A stretch of DNA of 64,000 nucleotides. Origin: Octopus sinensis. Lineage: Eukaryota. The stretch covers positions 146,258,001-146,322,000 of the forward strand of contig NC_042998.1 in the NCBI RefSeq assembly GCF_006345805.1, in the 5' to 3' direction. Under the pieces are notes generated by a model. It saw nothing but the letters and a program-made list of their open reading frames with translations, had not been told where the DNA came from and did no database searches. This document shows, one piece after another, positions 35,873 to 59,340 of the stretch. Positions within the stretch are counted from its first letter, which is position 1. Each line of letters starts with the position of its first letter. Position numbers and translations under genes: made by a program.

Positions 35873-36771
35873 GGATCTTTACCTTCTGATTGACAGATTT
35901 TCTGACTTCAAATTCCGCCGAGGTCGACTTTGTCTATCATCCTTTCGGGGTCGATAAATTAAGTACCAGTTACGCATTGGGTTCGATATAATCGACTTAA
36001 TCCGTCTGTCAGTCCTTGTTTGTCTTCTCTGTGTTTAGCCCCTTGTGGGTAGTAAAGAATTAGATTTAAAAAATATTTTTTTGTAACTAAACACTTTCAA
36101 ACTTCGTATACTGGTAGAATGTGTCGCATAAAACATGTTGAGAAAATTCTGTATTTTGGAAGTTATTTTTTGTTAAAGTTGCCGTATTTCGGTAATTTCA
36201 ACCAATCAATGACGTGTATTTAGCTGAATAAAATTACTGCTGTTGTTTGTCAACAACTTCTGGCGGTGTATATTTCGTTTGTCACTGTTATTTATGACAT
36301 ATTTCATTTCATTTACGTATGTATGAATAAACGAGTGTATCTGAAGCATGTTTACTTCATGGCACCACCATAATCGTTCGTGCTTCATTTTTCATTTGTT
36401 CCGTGACTCTAACCCTAAAACCCCAACCATAACCCCCAAACCTTAACCCTAACCCTAAAACCTTAACCCTAGCTCTAACTCTAAAACCCTAACCGTAACT
36501 CTAACCCTAAAACCCTAGCCCTAACCCTAACCATAAAACCGTAAAACCATAACCTTAAAACCTTAAAGCTAAGACCACTACAAACGCACGAACGATGTCT
36601 AAATAACAGTGACAAACGAAATATAAATAACTTCCAAAATGCAGAATTTTCTCAATAACGGCAAGAGTAAAAGATGTTTTTATATGACACATTCTACAAG
36701 TATACGAAGTTTGAAAGTGTTTAGTTACAGAAAATATTTTTTTAAATCTGTAGGTCAAAAGGTAAAGATCC
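35873..36771. mobile_element. GGATCTTT foldback element with degenerate (CCCTAA)n core; SINE A inserted in left TIR (35901-36060)
   Basis: Left end GGATCTTTACCTT, right end AAGGTAAAGATCC, long inverted arms, CCCTAA-like array at ~36408-36570. TSD not clear. Confidence 0.85.
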
Positions 36772-36811
36772 CTACGACTAAATAATTATTGCTGAAATTG
36801 GTACTGTCTTT

Positions 36812-36848
<37 letters not shown>

Positions 36849-36849
<1 letters not shown>

Positions 36850-37238
36850 TAGCAGTATCACCCGGTGTTGCTTGGGTTTGTTTCGATCCTTTAGAATTGG
36901 AATTTTTGAAAAGTAAAAATTTTGCATTATGCAACTTGTTATTCTCTTCAAGTAAACATTTTTCCAGTTGAAATACACCGAAAAATGGTGACACAGCAGT
37001 CAAAAATCGTAAAAAAATAGGGATTTTCATAGAAAAAAAGCACTTTTTTTATGTAAATAATTTTTGGTGTTAACATGGTCCGATTTGAATTTTATCTTCT
37101 ACAGAATGAAGAGCAAGCCTTCTTCTATCATACTCTCAATGTTGGTCAACTTGCGCTGCAGGATCTCGAAGGAGATAGTGTTAGTTGAAGGCTACCAAAC
37201 CTGCTACACACAGACAACTTCAGCTTTATATATATAGA
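36849..37238 (-). mobile_element. Non-autonomous Helitron
   Basis: Reverse strand A|TCTATATATATAAAG..GCAACACCGGGTGATACTGCTAG|T; 3' end near-identical to that of 22436-22818. Confidence 0.85.
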
Positions 37239-37239
37239 T

Positions 37240-37944
37240 TTGCTACACACTACTTTCCATCTTTAATAATGAAACTTGGTAGATCCAAAAGTTAAACACA
37301 CAGACACACACACAGATACACACACAGACACACAAGTTGAGTTTTATATATATAGATTTCTCAACGGGGATTTCAGGGGAGAATTTCAGGGAGTCGCTGG
37401 CGATGTATCGTGATGATCAAAAATCCGGCCAGCTAAAATTTGGTTAAAGTGATTCAAACTGCAGACTCAACGCAAAATGGTCACATTTAATTCAAAGCGT
37501 TAAAAATGTTATGCAGAAAATTGGTATGTGTTCACAAAGTCCAAACGATTAATACGAAAAAACCCTCCAGGCGACATCCCGAAAATTCATTTCTTTGCCG
37601 AATTTCTACAATGTTTACAGCGATTTGTTTTTATATCTTGATTTTTTATTTCTCATACAATTTACGCATGCTTGCACGCGTGGTGAACACAGTTCACGTC
37701 AAACAGCTGACTGAGTAAAGTTCACTATTCAATGCATGGGATAAGGCCTAAACAAACACATTATCGATCTTTGCACTTGCGAGATGAATTTCGGAAAAGA
37801 AATAGTGCAGTTCAATTTTCATTCGCCTAAACTTTCAGTGACCCATTTTTGGTGGTTCTACGATTTGTTGGCTAGGAGGAGATGTGCCGGGAAGTTAAAC
37901 ACACAGACACACACATAGATACACACACAGACACACAAGTTGAG

Positions 37945-37975
<31 letters not shown>
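37240..37975 (-). mobile_element. Further Helitron-like 5' segments
   Basis: Two copies of TATATATAA(A)ACTCAACTTGTGTGTCTGTGTG on the reverse strand, ending at ~37356 and ~37970. Confidence 0.55.
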
Positions 37976-37978
<3 letters not shown>

Positions 37979-38301
37979 GAATAGACAGAAAAGATTTTGC
38001 TTTCAAAAGAAATGTTATGTTTCTTTCTTCGCCATGGTGAGTTTGAATAAGTTTATAACCACCGAAAATTTTTATCAAACATGGGCAAGATTCCGTTTTT
38101 TTTTTTTAAATCTGCGTCTCCCCACCACTTTCTGTAAGAAACACTGGTATCCGTGAGTCTAAAACGGTTAAAGACACTGTTCTTTTTGTCTTAGTCAAAA
38201 AAAAGAAAGAAAATTCGCGCGCGCAACACACACACATACACATACACAAACAACACGTACACATTTGATAATTGATATAAGTGTATATCCATTTCGTGGT
38301 G

Positions 38302-38361
<60 letters not shown>

Positions 38362-38969
38362 ATACGCTTGTAGTACTCACACGCCAATGTACTAACACAT
38401 TCAAACACGCGCCTGCAATCACACATGCACGCACACATACACACACAAACACACGCACGAACGCATACACATTGAAATGCTAGCATATACATACTCTTTT
38501 GACACTATTTCGTACATTCATAACAACTTATACAAGCATATTATGTGAGTACTACGATCTTTCTTTCCTGTCTTCTTTCTTTTTCTTTCTTTACTTCTTC
38601 CTTTCTTCTTTTTGTTTGCATCTTATTTTTGGTTCTTTCCTTTTTTCCCTCTTTCTCTTTCTGTGTCTCACGCAGACATTCTCATACACATGTACATACA
38701 TACACAAATACTTTTGCATGATATTCCCATAAGTTAAGAGAAATATCAATGAAATGGCGCGACTGAGTGTAAAACGTTAGATAGACGCGATAATGAAAAT
38801 TCAAAACGATGTTCTTTGGCACTGTCATGATCAAACATACTGAGTGAAGTGAAATTCTTCACGTATCTAGGAATTGGAGGTAACGGAAGCGAGATATAGA
38901 GCAAGTCAAACCGCAAATATGTTAAGCCGATCTTGAAACCAAGATCTCTGTGCAGAGATCTTGGTTTCT

Positions 38970-39200
38970 AGCTGAGAAGTTCTATAAGCTGAGAATTTCG
39001 AATAGCATAGTCAAATTCGTCCTGCAATATGGTACCGAGTCATGGGAAAATAGACATAGATATCGTCAGAGAGTTTCTAACGTTCAGGATTAGGTGTCTC
39101 CGAAAATATCAAAGCATTGAATATCCTACGATTGTGAGCAACAAAGACATCTCGATCAAACCTGCCGATCAACAAATAACTGAATATAAATAGAGATAGT
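38970..39200 (+). mobile_element. Decayed RTE-like RT C-terminal fragment
   Basis: Broken frames read KLRI.NSIVK.VLQYGTESW..FRIRCLR..VSNKD. Confidence 0.5.
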
Positions 39201-39324
39201 CACATGTCACCCCGACATTTTAAGTGCTCCTATTTCCTAGTTGGTAACTTGTTCTTTTACTCCGTCCTACTACTTTTCTGACTCAGTGAGGGTGTGTAGC
39301 ACCTGGTGTGACTCAGTTGTAGTT

Positions 39325-39520
39325 CAGTTGTCAACAAATCTCAGAGCAATTATTGCAAGACTGTTGCCCTCAACTGCAGCTGCAACAGCCTCTACCACCT
39401 CACAGTCATTACAAAGCCAGGCAAAGAGATGTGCATTTTGTGTCAGGTCAAAGGATTGAAACATGTTTGAGTAATCACAATAAAATAACTGTGATTTGCA
39501 CAAATTACAAGAATGTAGCA
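39325..39520 (+). pseudogene. piggyBac-like transposase C-terminal Cys-rich domain remnant
   Basis: LSTNLRAIIARLL..KRCAFCVRSKD followed, in a shifted frame, by CLSNHNKITVICTN. Confidence 0.5.
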
Positions 39521-39567
39521 ACCAGTGGTGAATACGAGTGAACGGTAATATCTATATAATGAGTGAA

Positions 39568-39800
39568 GGCGGCGAGCTGGCAGAATCGTTAGCACGCCGG
39601 GCGAAATGCTTAGCGGTATTTCGTCTGCCGCTACGGTCTGAGTTCAAATTCCGCCGAGGTCGATTTTGCCTTTCCTCCTTTCGGGGTCGATTAAATAAGT
39701 ACCAGTTACGCACTGGGGTCGATATAATCGACTTAATCCGTGTGTCTGTCCTTGTTTGTCCACTCTATGTTTAACCCCTTGTGGGTAGTAAAGAAATAGG
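39568..39800 (+). mobile_element. SINE family A variant with 19-bp TSD
   Basis: GGTAATATCTATATAATGA at 39544-39562 and 39799-39817; tail ..GTGGGTAGTAAAGAAATAGG. Confidence 0.92.
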
Positions 39801-40279
39801 TAATATCTATATAATGAATTCACATTGATTTTTCTTTCCATTTCAATTCATGGAAATACATTGTGGCTATTTTGATGAATAAAACTTTTTTTCTATTATA
39901 GTACTGGTGTGTTTCATCTACAATTTACAGTTATTTATGCAACAAATTTATTATAATTTTCATCTCAGTTTTGATTTAATGTATATTGTAACGGAGATTG
40001 CCTGTTATGCTATTTTTTCAGCAGTATGACAATATTTTACATAATTGTAACACTATAAACATTTTTGTATTGGGGTATGTAAACACCCGAAGGGACTATC
40101 AGTTTTCGGAAATCCGAGGTGACTAAATCAGGGTTCATAAGACCAAGGTGATAATTGGAATCCAATAGGCGAAAGGCGGAATGAAATGACTGGGTGCCAC
40201 TCTTTGGACACTGAGGATTTGGCGCAGCTGGCTGGACGTTCAGTCTGTTTTGGTGACAGTGCATATTAGCAAAGGAGAT

Positions 40280-40321
<42 letters not shown>

Positions 40322-40781: not shown

Positions 40782-41180
40782 GGATCTTTTCCTTTTGAAC
40801 GGCAGTTTTCAACACAATTTCTACTTAACTAAACTCTTTTAAACTTCGTATACTGGTAAAATGTGTCAAAATAAAACATTTTTTTCTCTTGGCTTTCTTG
40901 AGAAAATTGTAATTTGTAAGTTTAACGTAGTTTAATTTTTCGAATTTTAACCAATCAATGGCCTCTATTGAGCTAAAATCATTTGCTGCGTTTAAAACTG
41001 AGACAACATCCTGTCACTAACCCTAACCCTAACCCTAACACTAACCCTAACCCTAACCTTAAATTTTAGCCTTTCGTTTTTTTTTCTTAATTGTTAAATT
41101 AATTTAATTGTTACGCGTGTGTCTAAAATTATTCGTTTTGTTTTTGTTTCGAGTTTTTGTTTTGAGATACACGTGTATAC
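40782..41180. mobile_element. GGATCTTT foldback element, one end, with (CCCTAA)n at ~41018-41060
   Basis: Near-identical to 58828-59190; interrupted by the pogo-type element. Confidence 0.85.
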
Positions 41181-41187
41181 TCGAGAT

Positions 41188-41689
41188 ACTCGAGTATAGT
41201 CTGCCCTTGAGTATAATACGCAGGGGATTTTTAGGGTGCTGTACTTCTGAGAAACCTAAACCTTGTGTATAATACGCACCCCTTCTCTAACTTGAGTCGT
41301 ACGTAATTAAGCCAGTAGCACCTAGTCGAACAAACACTTCCGTGCATGCGTAATACAATAATAGTGATGTTCTTAACTGTTATATGGGAATGTAAATATG
41401 TTTGCAAATTGTTTTGTTACATGTTCTGAATACTTTTATTTTCATAAATGTTGCTTACTGCAAGTTATAGATGATTCTTTTATGACTTCATTGCTTTCAG
41501 GCTTAGCTTAAGGTATTTTCGCGCCCGAGATCACAAAATGCGTCTGAATAAGCATTGTCGGACAGCAAACAGAGACTCGGACATTGCTTAGAAAATATTT
41601 TTCATTTTTAACCTCGTATATAGTACGCACTAGGGATTTTGACCTTTAAATTTTGGGAAAAAATGCGGATTATACTCGAGGATTTACGG
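41188..41689. mobile_element. pogo/Tigger-type element, second copy
   Basis: Collinear with 18818-19329. Right TIR TATACTCGAGGATTTACGG plus TA; left end clipped. Confidence 0.85.
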
Positions 41690-43132
41690 TATTTATAAAA
41701 AAACTCAACATAAAATACTCTCTATAGCTTCTTCACGGTCTGCTGGAGTAATTCTCCTTATGATATATTCGCATATCATAAAGAAATTGTTGAAATTAGT
41801 CATTACTCATTTTGCCCCAGTTTAGACATAATTTTTTGAGAACTGGAAATTATCAAATTAGACATTAATGCGGGAAAAATTGACTTGGAATCCAACAGAG
41901 AAAAGAATATTGATTGTAAAACATCAAAAATTATCCAGATATTTCATTAGCAACTTCAATTATTATACAAACGGGTCAAAGATGAGGAAAAATTTCTTGA
42001 AAAAACGTATCTAATTCTCACAACTCCAACAGAAGCAACTATGCTGAAAAGTGTTTACTCCCAAAGGTGGTGCCACAATGCAACATGATGATGCAAATTC
42101 TGCAACATAACAGGTAGTAGGGAAGAAATAATAAGAAATCAGAAATTGCTCATTTTGCCCCAGTTACCAATTTTGCACCCCACTCCGTCAATCGAATATA
42201 GATTTAATAAATGATTTAAACTATCGAAATGGAATATTTTACTTATTTGTAGCTTAAGAATAAACGATATTTTTGTTTCCACACGTACGAACGCTAATGG
42301 CGTGTGCACATATGTTCATATCACCCACTCTCTCCTTTACAAAAACACACACACATGCATACACAGATAATTGTCGTGTGTGTGTGTGTGTGGGGGGGGG
42401 TTGAAGTATGTGCATGTGTGCACGTGCTAGTAATGTTCGTTTGAATCTCTTTCTCTCCTGCACATATACTTTTACCACTCCTTTTTCCCAGTAGGACAGA
42501 TTGTTTACACTACAGGATTTTATCGCAAGCACTTTAATATAACAGATAAATGCTAGATCGTGGGATCTCGAAAATTTACGAAAGATTTATAGAGTACAGT
42601 AAAAAAATTTAATTTATAAAAATAGTAACGGAAAGTGATAACGTTGTGACCTGGATATGATAAATAAAACAAATAGATTTAACAAAACTGAAGACTTTAG
42701 TTGAAACTGATCGAAATATTTCAAGGACTGGTTCAAGGTGATGATGTGACAGATAAAATTAATTGTTTATTTCTATTTATATACATGAGGTGAAATGTAA
42801 TCTACATGAAACAAATATGGTTTGACTTTTAAATGTATAATGTAAACAGCATGATAGACTCTAGCCATTTGTATTCGTTATCTGAACTATAGATATCGAA
42901 GGAAAGAGAGTGTTGACAAAATAAATTAGCTACTTCTCTACATATGTTGCTGAGCGAATTTCACTTGAAACATGCATTAGTAGGTCCTCAATCGGGGTTC
43001 ATATGACCCCTAGGGATCTAATGTAAGATTTTTGATGTCCATGCAAGCAAAATGGTAAATTGGAGATCCATGGTAGTATTTTAAGAGTCCATGAAAAAGT
43101 TTTGCTTTAGACGTATTTTTGCAAGAAACAGC

Positions 43133-44041
43133 GGATCTTTTCGCTTTGACCGGCAGATTTTAAAATAATTTCTTTGTAACTAAACACTTTTAAACTTCGT
43201 ATACTGGTAGAATGTGTTTATAAAAAATATTTTTCTCTTGGCTTTCTTGAGAAAATTCTGTAGTTTGTAAGCTATTTGTTGTTTAATTTCTTGCATTTCG
43301 GCAATTTCAACCAATCAATGACGTCTATTGAGGTGAATACAATCTCTCTGGATCTTTGTCAACAACAATTATTTGCGGTGTCATATGAATTTGTCACTGT
43401 TATTTATAAGAAAAAAGATACCCTGTGACCATAAACTGAGGGGTCACTCGTAAACAGAGCTGGATAACAAAACCGTTCCCTCTTTAGTGTCCACCAATAA
43501 TTATGACCCTAATATCGATCTATTGCATTTCAATCTGGGTTAGGGTTAGGGTTGGGTTAGGGTTATGGTTATGGTTAGAGTTAAGGTTAGAGTTAGGGTT
43601 AGGGTTAGAGTTAGGGTTAGGGTTGGGTTAGGGTTAGGGTTAGGGTTAGGGTTAGGGTTAGGGGTGGGGGGAAGGTATATTTTTTTTCTTCAGAAATGTA
43701 AATAAACCCAATCTGTTTCTTAGGGAAATTAAAACTGCATATGTTGTGAACTCAGAATATGTGTTTATTAATAAAAGTTTAATAACGATAATCTTTTATT
43801 CATACGAACGTAACTGATATGAAATATGTCATAAATAACAGTGACAAATTCATATGACACCGCAAATAATTGTTGTTGGCAAAGATCCGGAGAGACTGTA
43901 TTCACCTCAATAGTTGTCATTGATTGGTTGAAATTGCCGAAATGCAAGAAATTAAACAGCAAATAAATAGCTTACAAACTACAGAATGTTTAGTTACAAA
44001 GAAATTATTTTTAAAATCTGCCGGTCAAAGCGAAAAGATCC
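43133..44041. mobile_element. Complete GGATCTTT foldback element with (TTAGGG)n core
   Basis: TIR GGATCTTTTCGCTTTGACCGGCAGATTTT at both ends. 8-bp TSD GAAACAGC at 43125-43132 and 44042-44049. TTAGGG array at ~43548-43642. Confidence 0.93.
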
Positions 44042-44051
44042 GAAACAGCTC

Positions 44052-44653
44052 GGATCTTTACCTTTTGACCTACAGATTAAAAAATAATTTTTTGTGACTA
44101 AACACTTTCAAACTTCGTATACTGGTAGAAAGTGTCACATAAAACATCTTTTACTCTTGGCGTTGTTGAGAAAATTCTGTAGTTTGGAAGTTATTTCTTG
44201 TTAAAATTTTCGCATTTCGGTAATTTCAACCAATCAATGACGTGTATAAAATTACAGCTGAATAAAATTACTGCCGTTGTTTGTCAACAACAACTATCGG
44301 CGGTGTATATTTCATTTGTCACTGTTATTTATGACATTGTTCGTGCGTTTGTACTGGTTCTAGCTTTAGGGTTTTACGGTTTTACGGTTAGGGTTTTAGG
44401 GTTAGGGCTAGGGTTTTAGGGTCAGAGCTAGGGTTAGGGTTTTAGAGTTAGGGTTAGGATTTTAGGATTAGGGTTAGAGTTACGGTTAGGGTTGGCGTTT
44501 TAGGGTTAGAGTTACGGAAAAAAATTAAAAATGAAGCACAAACGATTATGGTGGTGCCATGAAGTAAACATGCTTCAGATACACTCATTTATTCATACAA
44601 CCGTAACTTAGATGAAATATGTTATAAATAACAGTGACAAACGAAATATACAC
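44052..44653. mobile_element. GGATCTTT foldback element, right arm mostly deleted, degenerate TTAGGG core
   Basis: Starts GGATCTTTACCTTTTGACC; same subfamily as 35873-36771, in opposite orientation. Confidence 0.85.
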
Positions 44654-44869
44654 AGCTCAATTTCTTTTTCTAACCTTTTACATAGTTGAAACTACACATG
44701 AGAATGTGTGATGAACAAAATAGGAATTTTGAAAAAAGTATCTATGAAACTAGTTTTTAATCACCGAATGACTGTTGGACCATCAGAATAGAATAGCAAT
44801 CAAAGGCGTCCATAGCTAAAAAACGGTTGAGACTGCGACGCCGTCGATGGTTCTACTAAAGATTTTTTT

Positions 44870-45060
44870 CTTTCTACTACAGGCACAAAATTTGAACTTT
44901 CGACGAGCGGGAGGTGGGTGACTAGTTGATTACATCGAGCAAACACTCAACTGGTACTTATTTTCAATCTCCGCGGAATTTGAACTCAGAATGTATTGTC
45001 AGAAGAAATGCGGCAAAGCATTTTGTCTGGCGTGCTTACGGTTCCGCCAACTCGCTGCTT
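44870..45060 (-). mobile_element. SINE family A
   Basis: Reverse complement of family A. Confidence 0.65.
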
Positions 45061-45195
45061 TGCTTGACCTAAAATTAGCAGCAATATCTCCTTCAAATTA
45101 CTATCTAAAATAAAATACCGTTTGGATGATGGTATCCTTGACCTATAGTGACAAATGAGATGTGGTGGTCATGGATGATGCATTATTGATCACAA

Positions 45196-47737
45196 GTCAG
45201 TTTATGATATAGGCAAGAAAGTTCTGGGATTGATACAAAGAAAACATCAAGATTGGTTTAAAGAAAATGATGAACATATAGATGATTTATTGACTGATAA
45301 AAGACGTACTTTGTCACGCTATTTGTCAGCAAAGCCACAGGAAAGGGAAGTGTTGCATAGGGAACTCAAGGACGTAAAATCACGTGTGAGACAAAGGCTC
45401 TCTCAGATGAGGGATACGTGGTGGAGTAAGAAGGCTGATGAGATACAGGCGGCATCAGATTCCAATAACACAAAGCTGTTGTATGGTCTCTTGCGAAGAG
45501 TTTATGGACCGACGTCTTCCCTGATGACACCACTTCGGAGCAGGCATAGTAAAGAACTTCTTCGTGTTTCACAAGGAATTCTGCGAAGGTGGCAAGAACA
45601 CTTTGATGAACTTTTGAATCAGCAGTCTGTAGTCAGTGAGGATGTTCTCAATCTCATCCCTGGATTACCTGTGAAGGCAGAAATCGCAGAACCACCAAAG
45701 TTGGAAGAAGTTGCGATGGCTGTCTCAAAGTTGAATAATGGGAAATCTCCGGGTATGGATGGCATACATGCGGAGTAGTTACAGCATGTGGTGAGAAACT
45801 TCTGCAGAAACTTCACTCTTTGTTTGGTAAGATATAGACTAGTGAATCTGTACCTGAGGACTGGAGAGATACAGTAATGGTGGTCCTGTATAAGGGAAAG
45901 GACAACAGGAATGATTGTGGTAATTATAGGGGAGTATCATTACTGTCTGTCGTAGGAAAGGTTTTATGCAGGGTACTTCTGGATCGTCTGCTGAAGTACG
46001 TTGCAGTTTGTGTTCTTCCAGAAAGTCAATCTGACTTTCGTGTGGGATGTGGCACTGCTGATATGATCTTTTCAGCTAGACAGCTTCAGGAGAAGTGTGT
46101 GGAACAGGGTCTGGATTTGTATCAGGTTTTTGTCGATCTGACAAAAGCCTTTGATACCGTCAATAGAAAAGCATTGTGGAAAGTCCTCCAGAAACTTGGG
46201 TGTCCTGAAAAGTTCCTTGCTTTGCTTAGGTCTTTTCATGAAAACATGAATGGTAGGGTGAATGTTAGAGGGAAAATGTCGGAGCCCATTTCAATACAAA
46301 ATGGAGTGAAACAGGGGGATATTCTGGCACCGACCCTATTTTCCATATATTTTGCGATGGTGTTCTGTATTGCATTCAAAAACTGCAGATACGGTGTTTA
46401 TATCCATTATCGAACCTCTGGCAGCATATTTAATATCAGGCACTTTGCTGCAAAAACAAAGTTATTTACCTCTATTATAAGAGACCTTTTGTATGCAGAT
46501 GATTGTGAGCTAGCAGCACACACAGAGATTGATATGCAACACATTTTGAATGCATTCTCTGATGCTTGCACTGCCTTAGGATTGACGGTCAATCTCAAGA
46601 AAACTGTTGTCATGCATCAACCAGCCCCTGGTAAGCAGTATAGTGTACCAAATATCGATGTGTATGCTAAACGACTTGATGTAGTTGATCAGTTTGTCTA
46701 CCTGGGAAGTACTATTAATAGATATAGCAATTTGGATGATGAAATTCCATATAGAATTAGGAAAGCAAGTGTTGCTTTCGGAAGGATAGAAAAGCGCCTC
46801 TGGAGTCGACGAGACATATGCAGAAAGACAAAGACAGAGGTGTACAAGGCATGTGTGATCCCTTCTCTTCTCTATGCCTGCGAGACGTGGGTCACATATC
46901 GATACCACCTTAAACAACTGGAACGTTTCCATCAGATGTGTCTCAGACGGATCTATGGCATTAAGTGGAAGGACCGCATCAGTGATCTTGAAATATTGGA
47001 AGGCTCTCGGTATGAAAGTATAGAAGCTCTTGTGTTAAAGCAAAGGCTCAGATGGAGTGGTCATCTGGTCAGGATGAAGGATTCAAGGATGCCAAAACAA
47101 CTCTTTTATGGAGAGTTAGCTAAAGGAGAACGACCTCCACATAAACCAAAAAAGAGGTATAAGGACTTGCTGAAGGCTTCATTAAGAGATGCTTGCATCT
47201 CTCCTGACACATGGGAAGGCATAGCTATTGATCGTAGCAGGTGGAGAAGGATTGTGAACGAGGGGACAGCCACTTTTGAGAAATCTCGAGTTGCACATGA
47301 GAAAGTAAGGAGGGATGTCAGGAAGGGCATCGCTGTTACACTTCCAGATGGGAAGGGTCTTCCTAAGATGCTGACATGCAGTGTCTGTGCAAGACCCTGC
47401 CTCAGTAAAGCTAGACGCAAGAGTCATCTTCGTAGTCATAAAGCGAGACAGATGACAACCTGGCCACTGGTGGTGGTGTAACACACCATACTACTAATCA
47501 TATCTGTCGGGCATGTGGAAGAGAGTGTAATTTGGCAGGAGGACTTAAACGACATGCAAAGGTACATGAAACCCAGTTACAGCTACAGCCGGCTATTTCC
47601 GGTAAAGGTTTTAGTTGCCAATTCTGTACGATACATTGTAGATCTTTAGCTGGGCTAAAAAGTCACATTCGATCACAGCACCAGTAACAGTTAAGCTTCG
47701 TGCAATGGCCATTACTCGTTAACGAGGGGGCAGCCAT
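45196..47737 (+). mobile_element. 5'-truncated RTE-clade LINE
   Basis: RKHQDWFKEN, NGKSPGMDG, NYRGVSLL, QS.FR, FVDLTKAFDTV, GVKQGDILAP, LLYADD, YLGS, LRWSGH..RM..R.PKQL.YG. Short 3'UTR followed by TA-rich repeat. No APE domain present. Confidence 0.95.
45230..47687 (+). pseudogene. RTE reverse transcriptase ORF with three C-terminal C2H2 fingers
   Basis: ORFs 45230-45778 and 45877-47481 are linked by a stop, a frameshift and a second stop. A further frameshift near 47460 continues to TAA at 47685-47687. YADD at 46492-46503. Confidence 0.9.
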
Positions 47738-48023: not shown

Positions 48024-48087
48024 TGCACATACACACACACAGAGGAAGAAACGAATTTAAACAATATCCAGCATTTAAAAAAGGTTG

Positions 48088-48966
48088 GGATCTTTTCAAT
48101 TCTGAAGCCAGTTTTTTCAAATTTTTCCTACTGAACCAAACAATTTGAAACTTCGTATACTGGTAGAATGTGTCAAAAGTAAACTTAATTGTAAACCAGA
48201 ATGAAAACGGAATTGTAACTTCTAAGTTTAACGTTGTTTAATAATTAGAATTTTAACCAAGTCATTCGGCTTTATTTTATTTACTCCGTCTCGACCACCA
48301 ATTTGGTGACGTATTAAACATCTTAAATGTAAACAAGCCGCATGTCTCCGTGAAATCTCCTTCTAATTATTTAACGTACTCATGTTTCCAGGATCCTATA
48401 GTCAGCCACCTTCTAATAACAATATTTAAAACTAGTTAATAAGCCACATGTATTAAATTGAAAATGTTTCCATTCTGTTAGTACTTGCTTTCGTTTGCTA
48501 TTAAGAAGTGGCATCTCAGTGACGAGGCTTCTAACAAGATTTCGTTTCTAAGCTAATGCGTTTCATTTCACTTATTGTATTTATTTGTGCAAAAGGCAAG
48601 AAATTTAATATTAAAAAAGCAAAGAGCTGGCAGAAACGTTAGCACGCCGGGCGAAATGCGTAGCCGTATTTCGTCTGCCGTTACGTTCTGTGTTTGTTTA
48701 CAGTTTTCCGAACGTTAGTACGTCACAAAAGCGCTTTCTACGTCACACTAATAGAATGAAGTCAAGTTTTACACATGAAAACAAACAATCTGATTGGTTA
48801 AAATTCGCAGTTTTAATCTACGATTAAAGTCATAAAATAGATTTTTCTCAAATAAACTAGTTCCAACCTGTGTCTTGTTTTGCTAGACTCTATCAGCATA
48901 CGAAGTTTCAGAATATTTAGTTAAGTAGAAAGATCTGTGGTCCTGGCTTCAGAATTGAAAAGATCC
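48088..48966. mobile_element. Complete GGATCTTT foldback element without telomeric core
   Basis: Perfect 24-bp terminal match GGATCTTTTCAATTCTGAAGCCAG. 8-bp TSD AAAGGTTG at 48080-48087 and 48967-48974. SINE A head inside at ~48620-48690. Confidence 0.93.
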
Positions 48967-50509
48967 AAAGGTTGTATTGCAAAATCGCGAATCATCTAGC
49001 ACTTCTTTTTAAATCAGTTTTTAATATCACCACATTCAAGGTAGGAAATTTCTGTAAACTTTACTGAGGTTGTTCATTCTCCAACCTCTTTTTTAGTAGA
49101 AAAGAGACACACCTTGTAGACAAGCCACATAAGTATCTTTACACTATTGTAGGTCGCCTTTTAGCCGGCAATTTCCTGATTGTTTTAGCTAGCGAGTTCT
49201 TTTTGCATGTATTAACTGTGTAGTTTTTCCATGTACAACTGTTGAACATCTTGTGGGTTCAACATCTGCTATGATCTAACTGACATTTTTAGAGCAATTA
49301 AATGGTTTTCATTAACGAAATTAACTCTTGTTTTAACTCTATATTACATCATTCACTTCCCTTCTCACTACAAAAAAGACCTTGCTTGCTTGTATTAAAC
49401 ACGAAACATCATTCGCCGAAAGGCGCACACGCACATGGTCGCACACATACAATTACATATACACACATACACAAACCATTGATAGGCACTTTATTTTATC
49501 GATCCCGGTGAGATGAAAGGTAAAGATGACCTTCGTGGAGAGTAAACTCAGAACGTAAAGAGCCAGAAGAAATTCTGCCAACTCGCCGCCTTAAAACGGT
49601 TTATCTATAATAAAATATGATTATGTGAACAAAGCCTAAGCGTTCCGCTTGATTTGAACCACATTCCAAGGGATTGTAAAGAAGACACCACAAATCAGAA
49701 GTGTGTGTTAATCAAAGAAAGATACGATGATTGGATTGGTTGAAAAGACTTGAAGCAAAAATCGAAACTGCATTGTAAACAAACTTTCTGTGAGTTTACA
49801 GCGTTCAGAGAATTGAAATAGCGAAAACACCTCACATAGGTTATGTCTGCTTCAGTATGGCTGCAGTCCCATGACTACAGGAAGTAAAAGAGTAAAACAA
49901 TGCAGAAGGATGTAAACCACGTTGGAGTTTCTATTTACTCACGAATGGACTGTGCTTGTTATAAGAAAACAGTCTTCACAATGTACACAGCACAATGTTT
50001 CTTAGGTTAATTGACTTCTGCCCTATCAAATCGGTCAATTACATTTCTGTGGGCTCAATACTTTTTAACATCTCTCTTCATATAAATTGTTGACTTATAG
50101 GTATCAACGTATCAACGTTTATTAATACTTCATCACACTACGGTCGTTAACCACTGAGAATAGATTTCTTAACCTTGACCTAACCGTTTACTTATATACA
50201 ATTTACTGATCATTGATAGGGAAGCAAAGGTTAATGGCCGTTACATAAATTACGATATCCCAAAATAACTATCTTGTGCTGCTCGATTGGCGCAACCATC
50301 TGCTCCAAACATGAATTAAAAGATAGATGATAGCATAACATGATTCATTTTGGATTGCATGTCATCTTCACTGATAATAAATAAATACCGATATATTTAA
50401 GATACTACTTGGCTTTCAATGATACCTTAACAAGATCTCATAGTCACAAACATGTGTTCATCGTATGCAAATATTCGATAATAATAGCTGCATTATCTGT
50501 TGCTTTGAA

Positions 50510-50820
50510 GGCGGCGAGCTGGTAGAAACGTTAGCACGCCGAGTGAAATGCGTAGCCGTATTTCGTATGCCGTTACGTTCTGAGTTCAAATTCCGCCGAG
50601 GTCGACTTTGCTTTTCATCCTTTCGGGGTCGATAAATTAAGTACCAGTTACGCACTGGGGTCGATGTAATCGACTTAATCCGTTTGTCTGTCCTTGTTTG
50701 TCCCCTCTGTGTTTAGCCTCTTGTGGGTGGTAAAGAAATAGGTATTTCGTCTGCTGCTACGTTCTGAGTTCAAATTCTGCCTAAGTTATCTTCGCCCTTT
50801 CTCCTTTCGAGCTCGATAAA
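50510..50820 (+). mobile_element. SINE family A variant plus start of a second tandem unit
   Basis: After AAAGAAATAGGT the sequence restarts at ATTTCGTCTG..GAGTTCAAATTC. Confidence 0.85.
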
Positions 50821-52536
50821 AAGAACCCCCCCCCCCAATGGTGAAATAGAGGAGCTGCAATAATCTCGGACTGGGTGCTTTTTACTATCTACCCCGGTCT
50901 TTTTAGTTCTAAGTTCAAATCTCGTCATGGCTTAGTTGGGTGGTAGACGTAATCCCTCGCCCAGTTTAACGCCACCCTGGCCTCATGGGTACCTTTAGCG
51001 AGTACACTCTGTTGCAAGCATTCAGGCCATGTCTTTGATTGAAGATACCGCCCTCCTACTCCCTCCAATCTCAAAGACCCTGCAATGGGTGTTCCCTCCT
51101 GACTAAAATATAAAATTAAAAAGAAAGGTGCGGACTTGATAAATGAAATTATATTAGATCTGTAGCGAATCTTGCATGCATGAAGTAGATTCGATCCACT
51201 ATAGCAAAATTTAAACTAACACTGCTACAGAACTTTTCCCACGGTGGAACAATGGTTTTTCTCTGACAGCAGTTTTACATCTTCCAGATGCCTTTAGCTA
51301 GGCCGAAATAATGTCGTCACCACTTGACCCTTTCAAACCTCTTCTACTTCACCAAAAGCTAGAATAGTGATAACAAGACCACCAACTAAATCTATTGTTC
51401 TCAATGATATATCTATCCTTCTGGATCTTAATATAAGCAAGCACATCCCAAGCAAAAATCAGTCAATCACATCGTGACGACTCAACGAGTCCGGCTGACC
51501 AACCTTGATCAGAGGGGAAAATGAAGTTTACTGTCAGACAACGTCCCACACTCTCTCACTCTCACTCGTTCGAATTCTGTTCTCTTATAACATCATTCTA
51601 TCTCTCTCTGTATTAACTACATTAATCAGATCTAAAGATCGTTACAGATATTGCCACATCATAAGTCATCTTCTACTCACTGATAACACAACGTACCACT
51701 CATATTTTAATCTTGACAAATATATTTTTGAAAATGTTTAAGATGCAAGCATTGTACGTGGTTTAAATCACAGTCGCCCGGAGCCCCGATAGAGTGCTCT
51801 TGATATATGCCGTTCTTTTATAACCTTACAACGCCCCTCCCCAACAGATTGCTATCACCCGGGCTAATGAGTTCTGATCTAGAATTTTAGTCCAAGTGAC
51901 GCCGGACTCACTTTTGTGAGCCTCTTCAGGCTCTATAAATACAGAACCCTTTGCCCCCATATTTTACATGGCTATTAGTGTGACGTTAGTAAAGTGAGGC
52001 GGGTGGTAATCACGTCTTCATGTAGCTAATATTTTACCGTTTTCTTTTCAGTTAGCATTATGCTTTGAACTACTGCATATTGTCTGTTTGCTTTTGAAAC
52101 GTTTTGCTGCACTCTGTATAATATCCTTATACTAAAATACAGCATTAGATGAAATAACGATGTGTATAACATTTGCAGTATATATACAAATATATTGTAG
52201 AATGGCGCTAGCTGTAATATTTTGACTAAGAGAAACTTATCAAAGAGATCTGTACATAAAAAATCCAGAGCACGTTCATAATGTCGTCGAAGAGCGTCAG
52301 ATACAGTGCTTCGACTTTACTCGCTATCTCCAGCTATGAACCCCACGAATCTATGTTTACATATTCATTATAGATGTTATACACATCATTATTATAATCT
52401 CATACTGCTTCTAGCGTGTATATTAATTTAATTCTTACATGGCCAGTTTTATCACAAATCGGTGAATGTTTTGTTTATTGATTTCTTTATGAAAACAAAT
52501 ATCTTTCGGTTTAGTTTATAATATCTGGTGGTGTTC

Positions 52537-55661: not shown

Positions 55662-55809
55662 AATAATAACAACAACAACAACAACAACAACAACTAGAAA
55701 AGCACTTGCTCAAGGACACAAAGCATTATTTGGTTCAAGAATTGAATCTAGGACCTCATGCCTGTGACCCCCAACACCTTAACCACTACGCCATACACCA
55801 CTGCGCATA

Positions 55810-55995
55810 TAAGCACTACACCGATACGTTGCCAAAGTATCTCGCCCCCGGATCATATCTCTGCACACTGCTATCGGAACGGAAGTGGCTATGCGCAAGT
55901 GCGAGCCCCATGAATTAAAGTGGCTGTTCCAGCGCATCTCCCTCACCATCATCCAGGGCAACACCTTTTCCATTTTGTCTGCTGGGAGCATGAGG
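55810..55995 (+). mobile_element. CRE-clade-like non-LTR C-terminal remnant
   Basis: ELKWLFQRISLTIIQGNTFSIL resembles the LFQRIS..QRGNA.S.L end of CRE-type RLE ORFs. Confidence 0.55.
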
Positions 55996-56620
55996 CTGCG
56001 TTACAGGAAATAGTGAGTGTAAGAATTTCGTAGCTTACTACACGAACAATAAACCTGTAGAAAGATGAAGTGTAGTTCTACACACGTAAGCATCATTTTT
56101 CGATCGAAAAGAACCGATAAACCTAGTTATAGGAATTAAACTGGTTCTTCGGTCTGAGGTTAGGTCAATATTTTAGTGCACAGTTTCCTATTACAAATAG
56201 CAACATTTGAGTCCCGCGCTTTCCTCTCCTACTTCATTCACACCACTCCCACAAAAAGGTTACAAACTCCACTCTTCCTTTTATGACTAAGGCATAACGA
56301 ATCTAAGTCTAGTCAACCACATGAGCAGTTTATATCACATCACAATGTGTGAGGAAACATTAACGAAAGGAGCCTAACTTCGCGCAGTGTGAGTAATCTC
56401 ATTTGCATAATCTATTCAAGTTTGACAACCGTGTTAAATGTTATTCTCTCTATAACAAACACCACATGAAAACTGATAATTCAGTCGACTAAAGAATATT
56501 TATATATCTTATTGAGCTGCAGACTATCGGAGTTAAACGGAAATTGACCCTGAAACCAATTTTCCGTTAACATTGTGGTAAGAACTTGGAGATACACTCC
56601 CAATTCACATCAACACTATG

Positions 56621-56696
<76 letters not shown>

Positions 56697-56910
56697 TGTG
56701 TCTGTGTTTGTCCCCTACCACTGCTTGACAACCGGTGTTGGTATGTTTACGTCTACGTAAATTAGCGCTTCGGCATAAAGACTGATACATTAAGTACCAA
56801 GCTTTAAAAATATTAGAAATAAGTACTGGGGTCGATTTATTTGACTAAACCTTTCCAGACGGTGCCCCAGTATGGCCGCAATCAAATGACTGAAACAAAT
56901 AAAAGATAGA
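56697..56910 (+). mobile_element. SINE family B 3' half
   Basis: GTGTTTGTCCCC..GGTGCCCCAGTATGGCCGCA..GACTGAAACAA. Confidence 0.75.
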
Positions 56911-57656
56911 TATGGCAAACTTTTAGTTTTTATGCTGTGGTTTGTTGTCAAGACAGGTTTATCGCTAATGATTATCTTTTTCTTGTTTTAGTCATTGGAC
57001 AGCGACCATGCTGAAGCAGTGTTTTAAAAAGTTTAATTGAACAAATCGGCCCTAATAATTATTTTTTAAAGTGTGGTACTTATTCTATCGTTTTCTTTTG
57101 CCGAACGGGTAAGTTACGGGGACGAATACTGCCAATCCGATGCTCTACTGATTCTGCAAATCGACATGGTGATTGTCATATTTAAGTCACTGTCACATGT
57201 ATAAGGATGTTTGTCCCAATAAACACCTATGGGAAGATAGGCAGGAGTGTAGTTAGGGAGAGTGAGGGGGTGTCACCAAATTTATGACGGTGACACTTTG
57301 TTTTGCTGTATAAACTTGTATAGGCTTGGGGGTTCAGGGAATAGGAAACCCAAGGACTGTCCCAGGCGGCTTACATTCCCGCTACGTCACAAAGTGGGCG
57401 GGGTAGAGGGAATTATATCCGGAATTTAAAAACGTCATTGAAGAAATAAAATATAAGCCTCTGTCACGTGTATTAGGAAGTTAGTCCCAGTAATTACCTG
57501 CGAACAGAGAGAAAGGGGCAGAAAGTGAAAGATATAATTTTCTGGGACTTAACTAAGGACGTCCTTTAAACAATAAAATATGGCTGAATCCCCATTTGTT
57601 GAGATTAATGCAATGAACGACAGCAGACGTTAAGGAATGTCACGAAGGAGTGAGTC

Positions 57657-57718
<62 letters not shown>

Positions 57719-57974
57719 GAAGAAGAGAAGATTACGGAATGACCGATCCTATGGTGATAAGGAAAAGGTGGGGGAGTGTATGATAACTGTATATGATGAT
57801 GGTTGGGTGCGGTGTTTTATATGGATTGGATTCATTGTCACCTGAGCTGACACACATACAACCACACAGTAACGTCAGATACAAACTATGAAGATTAAAT
57901 GTAACGGAGATGAGAGAAAATAAAATAAATAGAGAGTGGGAAAGAAAGGGGAGAGAAAACGAGGAAAACAGGAA

Positions 57975-58026
<52 letters not shown>

Positions 58027-58400
58027 AAATGGGAAGAGAAAATACAAAGCGATCGAAAATTTCGGAGTGTGTGTGTGTGAGGGGGTGTATGTAGGTGTGC
58101 GAGCACATTGGCTTGAAAGGCGATGTAGTTTGTGAATTCGTGTGTGTGTGGGGGGTAAGAGAGTTTTTCTTTATTCACCATAAGGTTGAGAAAAAGAGGG
58201 GACAATACGGGGACAGACAAAACAAACGTTGGGGGTCAGGGTATCGAATGAGACGAAACGTATGAATAAACAAACAATTAAAATATATACAATTAAATGA
58301 GAATGAGTTATTAACAAAAAATGAAGCGGAGGACACGGTTGACCCCACAAACCACATACTCACACTGGAGACTTTGCTTTCTCCTTTTTTACATTCTCGA

Positions 58401-58827
58401 TTAAACAGGTTCTTTCACTCGCAACATACTTGCTATAGACTTCCATCTTTTACGAAACACACTTTGCGACAGGCATTTCTTCTCCAGCCTTATTTTCCGT
58501 TTCATGGGGAAAACGAAAAAGTCAATGAGCTCGAGACTGTTGCAATTCCTTTCACTCTCGTCTTCCATACTACTTCTTTCGCAACAGCAACTACCGAGAG
58601 AAAACAGACTCACTCCTCCCTATTCAAGGAGGCCGGCGGAACTATCTTAATTACAGATTCGCTCGACAGTTGTACTCTTCTCGAATGCGACAGCAACTGT
58701 TCAACATAAGCCCAGAGTCAGTCACCTTGGGGCATTGCACAATCGCGTGCAGGACAGTTTAACTGTCCCTCTCACATCTTGCACAAACCGACGAAGGTGC
58801 ACACCCATGTCTAAAGAGCTTATCTCG
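58401..58827 (-). pseudogene. Tx1/L1-type ORF2 C-terminal zinc-binding region
   Basis: RDKLFRHG..CARC..*TVLHAIVQCP..WAYVEQLLS..VAVAKEVVWKTR..LIDFF..KIRLE..FRKRW, with two stops and two frameshifts. Confidence 0.8.
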
Positions 58828-59340
58828 GGATCTTTTCCTTTTGAACGGCAGTTTTCAACACAATTTCTAGTTAGCTAAACACTTTTAAACTTCGTATACT
58901 GGTAGAATGTGTCAAAATAAAACATTTTTTCTCTTGGCTTTCTTGAGAAAATTGTAATTTGTAAGTTTAACGTAGTTTAATTTTTCGAATTTTAACCAAT
59001 CCTATCGCCTCTATTGAGCTAAAATCATTTGCTGCGTCTAAAACAGACAACATCCTGTCACTAACCCTAACCCTCACCCTAACCCTAACCCTAAATTTTA
59101 GCCTTTCGTTTTTTTTTCTTAATTGTTAAATTAATTTAATTGTTACGCGTGTGTCTAAAAGTATTGGTTTTGCTTTTGTTTTGAGTTTTTGCTTTCGTTT
59201 TAACCTTTCGTCTTTTTTTTCTTAATTGTTAAATTAAGATTATTTTCCATTGCTTTCGTTTTAGTCTTTCGTTTTTTTTCTTAATTGTTATCCTTAAATT
59301 AATTTAACAATTAATAAAAAAAAATTGAAAGGCTAAAATG
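58828..59340. mobile_element. GGATCTTT foldback element, one end, with (CCCTAA)n at ~59061-59093
   Basis: Near-identical to 40782-41180; internal inverted repeat 59095-59140 vs 59297-59340. Confidence 0.85.

What the first reader, a model, noticed from the sequence alone, without database searches (positions are those of the whole stretch)
35873..59340. Foldback DNA-transposon family that carries telomeric repeats
Six copies (35873, 40782, 43133, 44052, 48088, 58828) in at least four subfamilies start GGATCTTT. They have arms of up to ~250 bp sharing an AAACTTCGTATACTGGTAGAATGTGTC box and an AACCAATCA box. Two complete copies have perfect 8-bp TSDs. Five carry pure or degenerate (TTAGGG)n internally, so this family disperses interstitial telomeric sequence. 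GG termini with an 8-bp TSD and long TIRs point to MULE- or Merlin-like transposases, but no transposase is in the window and I cannot name the family.
Basis: partly seen in the sequence, partly recalled or inferred. Interest (0 to 1): 0.72.

Follow-up and report, generated by a model that had tools for sequence, protein, structure and literature searches.

The report
Mobile DNA element carrying telomere repeats
A small family of hairpin-shaped, non-coding "jumping" DNA elements in what looks like a cephalopod genome carries telomere-type (TTAGGG)n repeats in its centre, so each time it jumps it plants a piece of telomere-like sequence inside a chromosome.

Summary
Six copies of one repeat family lie between 35.9 and 59.3 kb. 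All start GGATCTTT and all carry the 27-nt box 58-85 nt from the end.

- Three copies are complete (A, B, E) and three lack the right arm (C, D, F).
- B and E have perfect 8-bp target-site duplications. C keeps 7 of 8.
- A paralogous empty site at 61.2-61.5 kb shows that B and C are insertions.
- Five copies hold a telomeric or degenerate telomeric array.
- All 16 perfect TTAGGG dimers in the 64-kb window lie inside the copies, which cover 6.5% of it.
- In A/C, and roughly in B, the array sits at the centre of the palindrome. Junctions are shared within subfamilies, so the array travels with the element.
- No transposase is in the window.

My reading is a non-autonomous, long-TIR, cut-and-paste DNA transposon. 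It is Merlin-compatible: 5'-GG termini, 8-bp TSD, TIR length in range. The superfamily is unproven. It is not a Foldback/MULE element in the strict sense, because the TSD is not 9 bp and the arms are not built of tandem repeats.

The genome-wide claim, the autonomous partner and a Dfam/Repbase match could not be tested, because the source genome was unreachable with these tools. Interest is moderate. It is a concrete case of transposon-borne interstitial telomeric sequence, based on six copies.

The parts
35873..36771 (.). Copy A (subfamily 1), complete, 899 bp. Left arm is 35873-35900 plus 36062-36300, interrupted by a nested SINE fragment at 35901-36061 (6-bp TSD AGATTT). Right arm is 36595-36771, with an internal deletion of about 100 bp.
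   Evidence: The arms are 87% alike. There is no recognisable TSD (TACTAACT vs CTACGACT, 3 of 8).
36409..36566 (-). Degenerate telomeric array of A, with the G-strand on the minus strand. It is bracketed by a short extra inverted repeat, ATCGTTCGTGC at 36373 and GCACGAACGAT at 36586, so it lies at the centre of symmetry.
   Evidence: TRF finds periods of 6, 20 and 26 with 68-78% matches. There are 7 perfect hexamers.
40782..41163 (.). Copy D (subfamily 3). It has the left arm, a (CCCTAA)7.7 array at 41017-41062 and about 100 bp of internal sequence. The right part is lost. It abuts another MITE-like element (41186-41694) that lacks its own left tip.
   Evidence: It is 96% identical to F over 367 aligned bases, K2P 0.039.
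43125..43132 (.). Left TSD of B (GAAACAGC).
43133..44041 (.). Copy B (subfamily 2), complete, 909 bp. Arms are 43133-43407 and 43831-44041. The right arm has lost the 27-nt box through a deletion of about 70 bp. The outer 54 bp of the two arms are essentially identical (53/53 aligned positions plus one 1-bp gap; 98% by blastn) and the inner parts are 95.5% alike.
   Evidence: (I1). As single-stranded DNA it folds as a hairpin at -253 kcal/mol, z = -33.8.
43537..43663 (+). (TTAGGG)21 array of B, roughly central in the 423-bp spacer between the arms.
   Evidence: TRF finds 21.5 copies with 88% matches. There are 13 perfect hexamers and the longest run is 6.
44042..44051 (.). Right TSD of B (GAAACAGC, 44042-44049), overlapping the left TSD of C (AACAGCTC, 44044-51).
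44052..44650 (.). Copy C (subfamily 1, internally inverted relative to A). It has the left arm, a degenerate (TTAGGG)n array at 44366-44517 and the U segment. The right arm is deleted from the terminus inwards.
   Evidence: (I2). It is 89% identical to A(rc) over 494 bases.
44651..44658 (.). Retained right TSD of C (CACAGCTC, 7 of 8 against AACAGCTC), lying exactly where homology to A stops.
   Evidence: The empty-site paralogue confirms a single copy of this motif before insertion.
48080..48974 (.). Copy E (subfamily 4), complete at 48088-48966, with a perfect TSD AAAGGTTG on both sides. It has a 24-bp perfect TIR and its arms are otherwise about 64% alike. It has no telomeric array. A SINE-head fragment lies at 48624-48694.
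58828..59339 (.). Copy F (subfamily 3). It has the left arm, a (CCCTAA)5.7 array at 59061-59094, and an internal 45-bp unit repeated in direct and inverted orientation up to 59339. No right arm was found up to the end of the window. It abuts the 3' side of a gag-like retroelement ORF.
61202..61476 (+). Paralogous empty site. The left flank (43027-43132) and right flank (44667-44828) of B+C are contiguous here, whereas at the B/C locus they are about 1.5 kb apart.
   Evidence: 77% and 79% identity, with a 4-bp gap between the two matches.
36099..36125 (+). The 27-nt box AAACTTCGTATACTGGTAGAATGTGTC. Other copies are at 36686-36712 (-), 40841-67, 43192-218, 44110-36, 48148-74 and 58887-913. It is the most conserved 27-column stretch of the arm alignment.
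   Evidence: 7 matches against 0 expected; conservation 0.95 against an arm mean of 0.82.

Best explanation
This is a family of non-autonomous class II (cut-and-paste) transposons of about 0.9 kb.

STRUCTURE
- Each unit has long terminal inverted repeats of up to about 280 bp, ending 5'-GGATCTTT...AAAGATCC-3'.
- Each arm has a strongly conserved subterminal 27-nt box about 58-85 nt in from the end. I take this to be a transposase binding site.
- Each arm has a CCAAT-type box about 185 nt in.
- The central spacer holds a (TTAGGG)n array in three of the four subfamilies.

MECHANISM
- A transposase supplied in trans binds the ends, excises the unit and re-inserts it at an 8-bp staggered cut, which produces the 8-bp TSD.
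- Best guess for the transposase is a Merlin/IS1595-type DDE enzyme. A MULE is second.
- The telomeric array is cargo at the tip of the hairpin and is copied to every new site. The family therefore seeds interstitial telomeric sequences.

ORIGIN OF THE ARRAY
- Most likely it entered once, in an ancestor of subfamilies 1-3, at the centre of the palindrome.
- Two routes are plausible: telomerase-type repair of a centre break, or capture of telomeric DNA between two ends.
- It has since expanded, contracted and decayed by slippage and mutation.

SHOWN
- The copies, TIRs, TSDs and empty site.
- No coding capacity.
- The arrays lie inside the copies, at the centre, with junctions shared within subfamilies.

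INFERRED
- The trans-acting transposase and its superfamily.
- The role of the 27-nt box.
- How the array was acquired.
- The genome-wide impact.
For: - Six copies with unrelated flanks share precise GGATC termini.
- B and E have perfect 8-bp TSDs, and C has 7 of 8.
- The flanks of B+C are contiguous in a paralogue at 61202-61476.
- The 27-nt box has 7 matches against 0 expected and is the most conserved part of the arms.
- B forms a long hairpin, z = -33.8.
- No transposase domain was found in the 30 longest ORF pieces. Only RVT_1 and zf-CCHC from other elements were found.
- All 42 near-perfect telomeric 12-mers and all 16 perfect dimers of the window lie inside the copies, which are 6.5% of the window.
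- The array junctions are identical in D and F, and in A and C. B shares with A/C the segment on one side of the array, in the same orientation relative to the G-strand.
- In A the array is bracketed by an extra short inverted repeat, so it lies at the centre of symmetry.
- Array orientation along the chromosome is mixed: A, D and F have the C-strand on +, B and C the G-strand. This is what insertion in either orientation predicts.
- Merlin is defined by TIRs of 24-462 bp, a terminal 5'-GG and 8-9-bp TSDs (PMC8101967). Merlin families are annotated in Octopus vulgaris (PMC13282606).
Against: - There are only six copies, all within 23.5 kb. No copy from elsewhere in the genome could be examined.
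- No autonomous element or transposase was found, so the superfamily is unproven.
- A has no recognisable TSD.
- Three of six copies lack the right arm. For D and F the complete form of the subfamily has never been seen.
- Array junctions differ between subfamilies, so more than one acquisition cannot be excluded.
- E has no array.
- The host is identified only weakly. The best hit of a neighbouring gag-like ORF is an Octopus bimaculoides protein at 32% identity.
Confidence: 0.8

Rival explanations
1. The elements are transposons, but the telomeric arrays are not inherited cargo. Telomerase or DSB repair adds TTAGGG repeats again and again at breaks in the fragile hairpin centre, independently in each subfamily or copy.
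For: - The arrays sit at or near the centre of symmetry.
- The array junctions and neighbouring sequence differ between subfamilies A/C, B and D/F.
- The youngest-looking copies have the purest arrays. B has a run of 6 perfect units, and D and F show 92% matches.
- Insertion of telomeric repeats at double-strand breaks during repair is documented in mammals (PMC2246262 and PMC7215372, listed).
Against: - D and F share both junctions, and so do A and C, so within subfamilies the array is clearly inherited.
- B and A/C share the flanking U segment on the same side of the G-strand. This fits one ancestral array better.
- E, also a palindromic copy, has none.
Confidence: 0.12
2. The TTAGGG-like tracts are ordinary microsatellites. 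They grew by slippage from a chance proto-motif inside the element, in a very microsatellite-rich genome, and have no historical link with telomeres or telomerase.
For: - The window is full of simple repeats: 102 TRF rows, including AAT, ATG, AC, AG and AT.
- The A/C arrays are mixtures of TTAGGG, TTTTAGGG, TTACGG and TTAGAG with higher-order periods of 20 and 26.
Against: - The motif is exactly the telomere repeat reported for Mollusca (PMC6410037).
- It is present in three diverged subfamilies.
- No other TTAGGG dimer exists in the remaining 60 kb, although that sequence holds dozens of other microsatellites.
Confidence: 0.08
3. The family is mobilised by a superfamily other than Merlin that also gives an 8-bp TSD: a MULE/Mutator, hAT, P, Zisupton or Novosib transposase.
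For: - An 8-bp TSD is not unique to Merlin.
- MULE foldback families such as Tm1 give 8-10-bp TSDs, mostly 9 (PMC3169594).
- hAT, Mutator and unclassified TIR families are far more numerous than Merlin in O. vulgaris (Table 1 of PMC13282606).
Against: - All three TSDs here are 8 bp, not 9.
- The termini are GG, not the hAT-type (C/T)A(G/A)NG or the P-type CA (from my own knowledge).
- None of the three TSDs fits the hAT nTnnnnAn pattern.
- The arms contain no tandem subrepeats of the FB/Tm1 kind.
Confidence: 0.4
4. These are not transposons. They are pieces of a subtelomeric or segmentally duplicated block that contains degenerate telomere tracts.
For: - All copies cluster within 23.5 kb. The chance of that range for 6 uniformly placed points is about 0.03 (my calculation).
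- Subtelomeres commonly hold interspersed telomere-like tracts.
Against: - Homology ends precisely at GGATC and GATCC, and the flanks are unrelated.
- There are 8-bp TSDs and a paralogous empty site.
- The telomeric strand orientation is mixed.
- No terminal telomere array lies within the window, and ordinary LINE, SINE and retroelement content surrounds the copies.
Confidence: 0.03

Closest known systems
Merlin superfamily non-autonomous elements (Feschotte 2004; summarised in PMC8101967)
   Same: Terminal 5'-GG, an 8-bp TSD, and a TIR length inside the published 24-462-bp range. Merlin families are annotated in octopus.
   Different: No DDE_Tnp_IS1595 transposase has been linked to these termini. 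No Merlin element with an internal telomeric array turned up in my literature searches.
Foldback-type MULE elements (Drosophila FB; Tm1 of root-knot nematodes, PMC3169594)
   Same: Long inverted arms make up most of the element. Many copies are MITE-like and non-coding. Hairpin potential is strong, and copies with missing ends are common.
   Different: FB and Tm1 arms are built of short tandem repeats and give mostly 9-bp TSDs. Here the arms are unique sequence and the TSDs are 8 bp.
Tandem-repeat-containing MITE-like elements of molluscs (bivalve families such as those of Donax and Crassostrea; from my own knowledge, discussed in the review PMC6947457, which appeared but which I did not read)
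   Same: A short non-autonomous mobile unit with a tandem-repeat core that spreads repeat arrays around the genome.
   Different: Those cores are family-specific satellites, and many of those elements are Helitron-like, without TIRs or TSDs. Here the core is the telomere repeat itself, inside a TIR element.
Ciliate telomere-bearing transposons (Oxytricha TBE1, Tetrahymena Tel-1; from my own knowledge)
   Same: DNA transposons physically associated with telomeric repeats at internal chromosomal sites.
   Different: In ciliates the repeats sit at the extreme termini of the element. Here they are at the centre, and the termini are GGATC.
Short interstitial telomeric sequences inserted at double-strand breaks (PMC2246262, PMC7215372)
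   Same: Short TTAGGG tracts of 5-25 units at internal sites. This is a plausible origin for the first array, at a break in the hairpin centre.
   Different: Those are single, non-mobile insertions in unique DNA. Here the tract is part of a repeated mobile unit with TIRs and TSDs.

Membership tests
Non-autonomous TIR (class II) transposon / MITE-like element | Terminal inverted repeats with precise, shared termini | tested here: met
   GGATCTTT...AAAGATCC in A, B and E. The same left terminus is present in C, D and F.
Non-autonomous TIR (class II) transposon / MITE-like element | Target-site duplication of fixed length | tested here: met
   8 bp: GAAACAGC (B), AAAGGTTG (E), and AACAGCTC/CACAGCTC (C). 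None is recognisable for A.
Non-autonomous TIR (class II) transposon / MITE-like element | Empty site lacking the element | tested here: met
   Paralogous empty site at 61202-61476. It is a paralogue, not an orthologous or allelic site.
Non-autonomous TIR (class II) transposon / MITE-like element | No coding capacity; small size | tested here: met
   No ORF longer than 80 aa lies inside the copies and there are no Pfam hits. Complete copies are 879-909 bp, at the upper end of the MITE size range.
Non-autonomous TIR (class II) transposon / MITE-like element | High copy number across the genome | not testable with these tools
   Pattern scans of the metagenome, prokaryote-genome and viral collections gave nothing real. 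The source genome is not in the protein collection.
Merlin superfamily | 8-9-bp TSD | tested here: met
   Three TSDs of 8 bp. Definition from PMC8101967.
Merlin superfamily | Conserved terminal 5'-GG; TIR of 24-462 bp | tested here: met
   All nine arms start GG. TIRs range from 24 bp (the perfect part in E) to about 280 bp (B, C).
Merlin superfamily | Autonomous partner encoding a DDE_Tnp_IS1595 transposase with the same termini | not testable with these tools
Foldback (FB) / MULE foldback elements | TIRs composed of short tandem subrepeats of variable number | tested here: not met
   TRF reports tandem arrays only in the central telomeric tracts, none in the arms. Arm alignment shows unique sequence.
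Foldback (FB) / MULE foldback elements | 9-bp (8-10) TSD | tested here: not met
   All three TSDs are 8 bp. Tm1 gives mostly 9 bp (PMC3169594). 8 bp is at the edge of that range, so this is weak on its own.
hAT superfamily | 8-bp TSD, with short TIRs starting (C/T)A(G/A)NG and a target pattern nTnnnnAn (from my own knowledge) | tested here: not met
   The TSD length fits. The termini are GGATC, the TIRs are long, and 0 of 3 TSDs have T at position 2 or A at position 7.
Telomere-bearing transposons of ciliates (TBE/Tel-1) | Telomeric repeats at the extreme ends of the element | tested here: not met
   The arrays are 235-405 bp inside the termini.

The most novel reading that the evidence does not exclude
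The palindrome centre of this family is a preferred substrate for telomerase-type healing, and the family is the main source of interstitial telomeric sequence in this (probably cephalopod) genome. Its copies would then act as dispersed binding sites for telomere proteins, as fragile sites, or as seeds for new telomeres. Inward-facing CCAAT boxes in both arms might drive convergent, TERRA-like transcription of the repeat. This would link one transposon family to the extensive chromosome reshuffling reported for coleoid cephalopods.
Probability: 0.08. Interest if true: 0.75.

Novelty: new variant of a known kind. Interest (0 to 1): 0.42.

Why it matters
[quoted passage not shown] Documented origins are chromosome fusion and repair-associated insertion.

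A TIR transposon whose inherited core is the telomere repeat would be a clean, sequence-level example of that third route. It comes from a lineage, cephalopods, whose genomes are repeat-rich and heavily rearranged.

It would also give a practical caution. In such genomes, ITS maps cannot be read as relics of fusions without first masking this family.

The value is limited until the copy number, the share of all ITS inside the family and the autonomous partner are known.

Tried and rejected
1. Looked for copies outside the window.
- The exact or degenerate 27-nt box found 0 hits in metagenome contigs and genome contigs.
- The gapped pattern GGATCTTT-N40-62-AAACTTCGTATRC found 0 hits in viral contigs and 13 in metagenome contigs.
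- All 13 are chance matches. None hits the arm profile at E <= 1.

2. Tried to reach the source genome through proteins.
- The LINE RT ORF is not on record and its best homologues are only 55% identical.
- The gag-like ORF has two weak hits. One is Octopus bimaculoides at 32%, with no locus on record. The other is a 1.8-kb Logan contig.
- The 167-aa TE ORF has hits of 61% or less on long ENA contigs. The one I fetched (L015) shares only that ORF, with no SINE and no arms, so it is another organism.

3. Looked for more diverged copies in the window with an nhmmer arm profile. None was found.

4. Looked for a transposase in the window. Pfam on the 30 longest stop-to-stop ORF pieces gave only RVT_1 and zf-CCHC.

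5. Ran Rfam on the window at gathering thresholds and on the 35.8-59.4 kb region at a permissive E-value cut-off. There was no real hit and no telomerase RNA. Sub-threshold miRNA-model hits are hairpin or low-complexity artefacts.

6. Looked for right ends of D and F by searching for their left-flank 8-mers downstream. None was found. A 6-of-8 match near 59419 was rejected as chance.

7. Searched the literature for a described transposon with internal TTAGGG arrays in molluscs or other animals. No such family was found, but Repbase and Dfam are not searchable here, so prior description cannot be excluded.

8. Considered the 11-nt identity of the box (AACTTCGTATA) with the loxP arm. There is no second inverted half-site, and the TSDs speak for a DDE enzyme, so I treat it as coincidence.

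Full report
CONTEXT

The window is AT-rich, at about 0.31-0.43 GC. It is packed with microsatellites (102 TRF rows) and has no tRNA or Rfam genes.

It carries typical animal retroelements:
- a LINE reverse-transcriptase ORF at 45179-47481 (+);
- a gag-like zinc-knuckle ORF at 59483-60514 (-);
- a SINE-like repeat of about 184-240 bp in a dozen copies.

The only named relative of any ORF is an Octopus bimaculoides protein at 32% identity. Molluscs use TTAGGG telomeres (PMC6410037). The host is therefore probably a cephalopod, but this is weakly supported.

GGATCTTT occurs seven times in 64 kb. Six occurrences are the stated starts and one is internal to copy B. The 27-nt box AAACTTCGTATACTGGTAGAATGTGTC has seven matches with up to 3 mismatches, where shuffles give none.

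blastn of each copy against the window and an nhmmer profile of the arms find exactly six copies, all between 35.9 and 59.3 kb.

Arm identities define four subfamilies:
- A/C, about 90%;
- B;
- D/F, 97%, with K2P 0.039 over 367 bases;
- E, about 60-70% to the others.

Every arm starts GGATCTTT(T/A)C. The 27-nt box lies 58-85 nt in and is the best conserved 27-column stretch of the alignment, at 0.95 against a mean of 0.82. An AACCAAT (CCAAT-type) box lies about 185 nt in.

ANATOMY OF THE COPIES

B (43133-44041)
- It is the cleanest copy. Its arms are 275 and 211 bp.
- The outer 54 bp are essentially identical (53/53 aligned positions plus one 1-bp gap; 98% by blastn) and the inner parts are 95.5% alike.
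- The right arm has lost the box through a deletion of about 70 bp.
- As single-stranded DNA it folds into one long hairpin, -253 kcal/mol, z = -33.8.

E (48088-48966)
- It has a 24-bp perfect TIR, but its arms are otherwise only about 64% alike.
- It contains a SINE-head fragment.

A (35873-36771, ending 2 bp earlier than I first assumed)
- It is complete but older, with arms 87% alike.
- Its apparently long left arm contains a nested SINE fragment (35901-36061) with its own 6-bp duplication AGATTT.

C, D and F have only the left arm.
- D stops at 41163-41185, where it meets another MITE-like element (41186-41694, a relative of 18817-19331) that has itself lost its left tip. This points to a secondary deletion.
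- F runs into the 3' side of the gag-like retroelement.

EVIDENCE FOR TRANSPOSITION

B is flanked by GAAACAGC on both sides and E by AAAGGTTG on both sides.

C starts 2 bp after B's right TSD. Its left flank is AACAGCTC, and CACAGCTC lies exactly where its homology to A stops (44651-44658).

The DNA flanking B+C belongs to another repeat with a paralogue at 61202-61476. There the two flanks are contiguous and the target motif occurs once:
- paralogue: ...TTGCAAAAACCAGCTAGG...
- reconstructed B/C site: ...TTGCAAGAAACAGCTCAATTTC...

So B and C are two insertions whose targets overlap by 6 bp. I estimate the chance of two copies landing within 10 bp of each other in this window at about 0.005.

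C lost its right arm through a deletion that runs from the transposon end inwards and keeps the TSD. The junction shows a 2-nt AC microhomology. That pattern is what a break at the element end, followed by one-sided resection, would leave. This step is inference.

A has no recognisable TSD (3 of 8).

THE TELOMERIC ARRAYS

TRF and pattern searches find five arrays:

| Copy | Coordinates | Strand / form | Perfect hexamers | Notes |
|---|---|---|---|---|
| A | 36409-36566 | C-strand on + | 7 | degenerate, periods 20 and 26 |
| D | 41017-41062 | 7.7 units | 5 | 92% matches |
| B | 43537-43663 | 21.5 units, G-strand on + | 13 | run of six perfect units |
| C | 44366-44517 | G-strand on + | 10 | degenerate |
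| F | 59061-59094 | 5.7 units | 4 | 92% matches |

All 42 near-perfect 12-mers and all 16 perfect dimers of the window fall inside the six copies, which make up 6.5% of it. None lies in the other 60 kb.

Evidence that the array is inherited:
- A is the internal inverse of C (I2), and the two share both array junctions. D and F do too.
- B shares with A/C a segment of about 57 nt on the same side of the G-strand (89%).
- In A the array is bracketed by an additional short inverted repeat (36373 and 36586), so it lies at the centre of symmetry. In B it lies mid-way in the 423-bp spacer.

The simplest reading is that the array is inherited cargo at the hairpin tip, present in the ancestor of three subfamilies. 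It has since changed by slippage and decay. The older copies A and C are the most degenerate.

Mixed strand orientation along the chromosome fits insertion in either orientation. It argues against subtelomeric relics.

WHAT MOBILISES IT

No transposase is present. Pfam on the 30 longest ORF pieces gives only RVT_1 and zf-CCHC.

The three testable Merlin features are all met (PMC8101967): an 8-9-bp TSD, a terminal 5'-GG and TIRs of 24-462 bp. Merlin families are annotated in Octopus vulgaris (PMC13282606).

Strict Foldback/MULE membership fails on two features. Those elements have arms built of tandem subrepeats and mostly 9-bp TSDs (PMC3169594). Here the arms are unique sequence and the TSDs are 8 bp.

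hAT fails on the termini and on the target pattern.

I therefore call it Merlin-compatible but unassigned.

HOW THE ARRAY GOT THERE (INFERENCE)

Long palindromes break at their centre, and telomeric repeats are known to be inserted at breaks during repair (PMC2246262, PMC7215372). A spacer also stabilises a palindrome. Alternatively, two ends flanking telomeric DNA moved together. The adjacency of B and C shows that such configurations arise. Neither route can be tested with six copies.

NOVELTY AND LIMITS

My literature searches found no described TIR transposon with a telomeric core in molluscs or other animals. Reviews mention transposon-borne ITS only as a possibility.

Repbase and Dfam could not be queried, and uncurated cephalopod libraries may already contain this family.

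Everything rests on one 23-kb cluster. I cannot say whether the family is abundant, whether arrays are the rule, or whether it accounts for much of the genome's ITS. Hence the moderate interest score.

Noticed in passing
window 62192-62850; also 3576-3755, 6041-6112, 10363-10510, 16325-16412, 21444-21582, 39564-39802, 44964-45061, 50506-50821: A SINE-like repeat of about 184-240 bp (core ...TTCAAATTCCGCCGAGGTCGAC...GGGGTCGAT...) occurs in a dozen copies. At 62192-62850 it forms a head-to-tail array of 3.6 units, which is unusual for a SINE. No tRNA or Rfam hit was found for its head.
   Followed up: partly
window 6820-8287 and 8250-9718: A very recent tandem duplication of a 1.43-kb unit (99.5% identity over 1471 bp). 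It includes (ATG)n(AAT)n microsatellites and SINE fragments.
   Followed up: partly
window 18817-19331 and 41186-41694: A second, unrelated MITE-like family of about 515 bp with TIRs ACCGTAAATCCTCGAGTATA. The copy next to D has lost its left tip, which marks a deletion that also removed the right part of D.
   Followed up: partly
window 44042-44058: Copies B and C were inserted into targets that overlap by 6 bp (GAAACAGC and AACAGCTC). This suggests insertion next to a resident end, through local hopping or end targeting, or a strong local target preference.
   Followed up: partly
window 36099-36111 and the other 27-nt boxes: The start of the conserved box (AACTTCGTATA) is identical over 11 nt to the 13-bp arm of loxP (from my own knowledge). 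There is no second inverted half-site, so it is probably coincidence.
   Followed up: no
window 59095-59339: Inside F a 45-bp unit (ATTTTAGCCTTTCGTTTTTTTTTCTTAATTGTTAAATTAATTTAATTG) occurs twice in direct and once in inverted orientation. This forms a secondary small palindrome next to the telomeric tract. D has the unit once.
   Followed up: no
window 32856-33390: A G-rich minisatellite region (GGTAGAAT-type units, periods 19-47) coincides with a strong GC-skew peak.
   Followed up: no
L015 (ENA ERZ25073825, contig ctg117732): Many long ENA contigs (up to 3.4 Mb, GC about 0.33) carry relatives, at up to 61% identity, of the 167-aa TE ORF at 6249-6749. They come from some other AT-rich eukaryote stored among the metagenome assemblies. 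The organism was not identified.
   Followed up: partly
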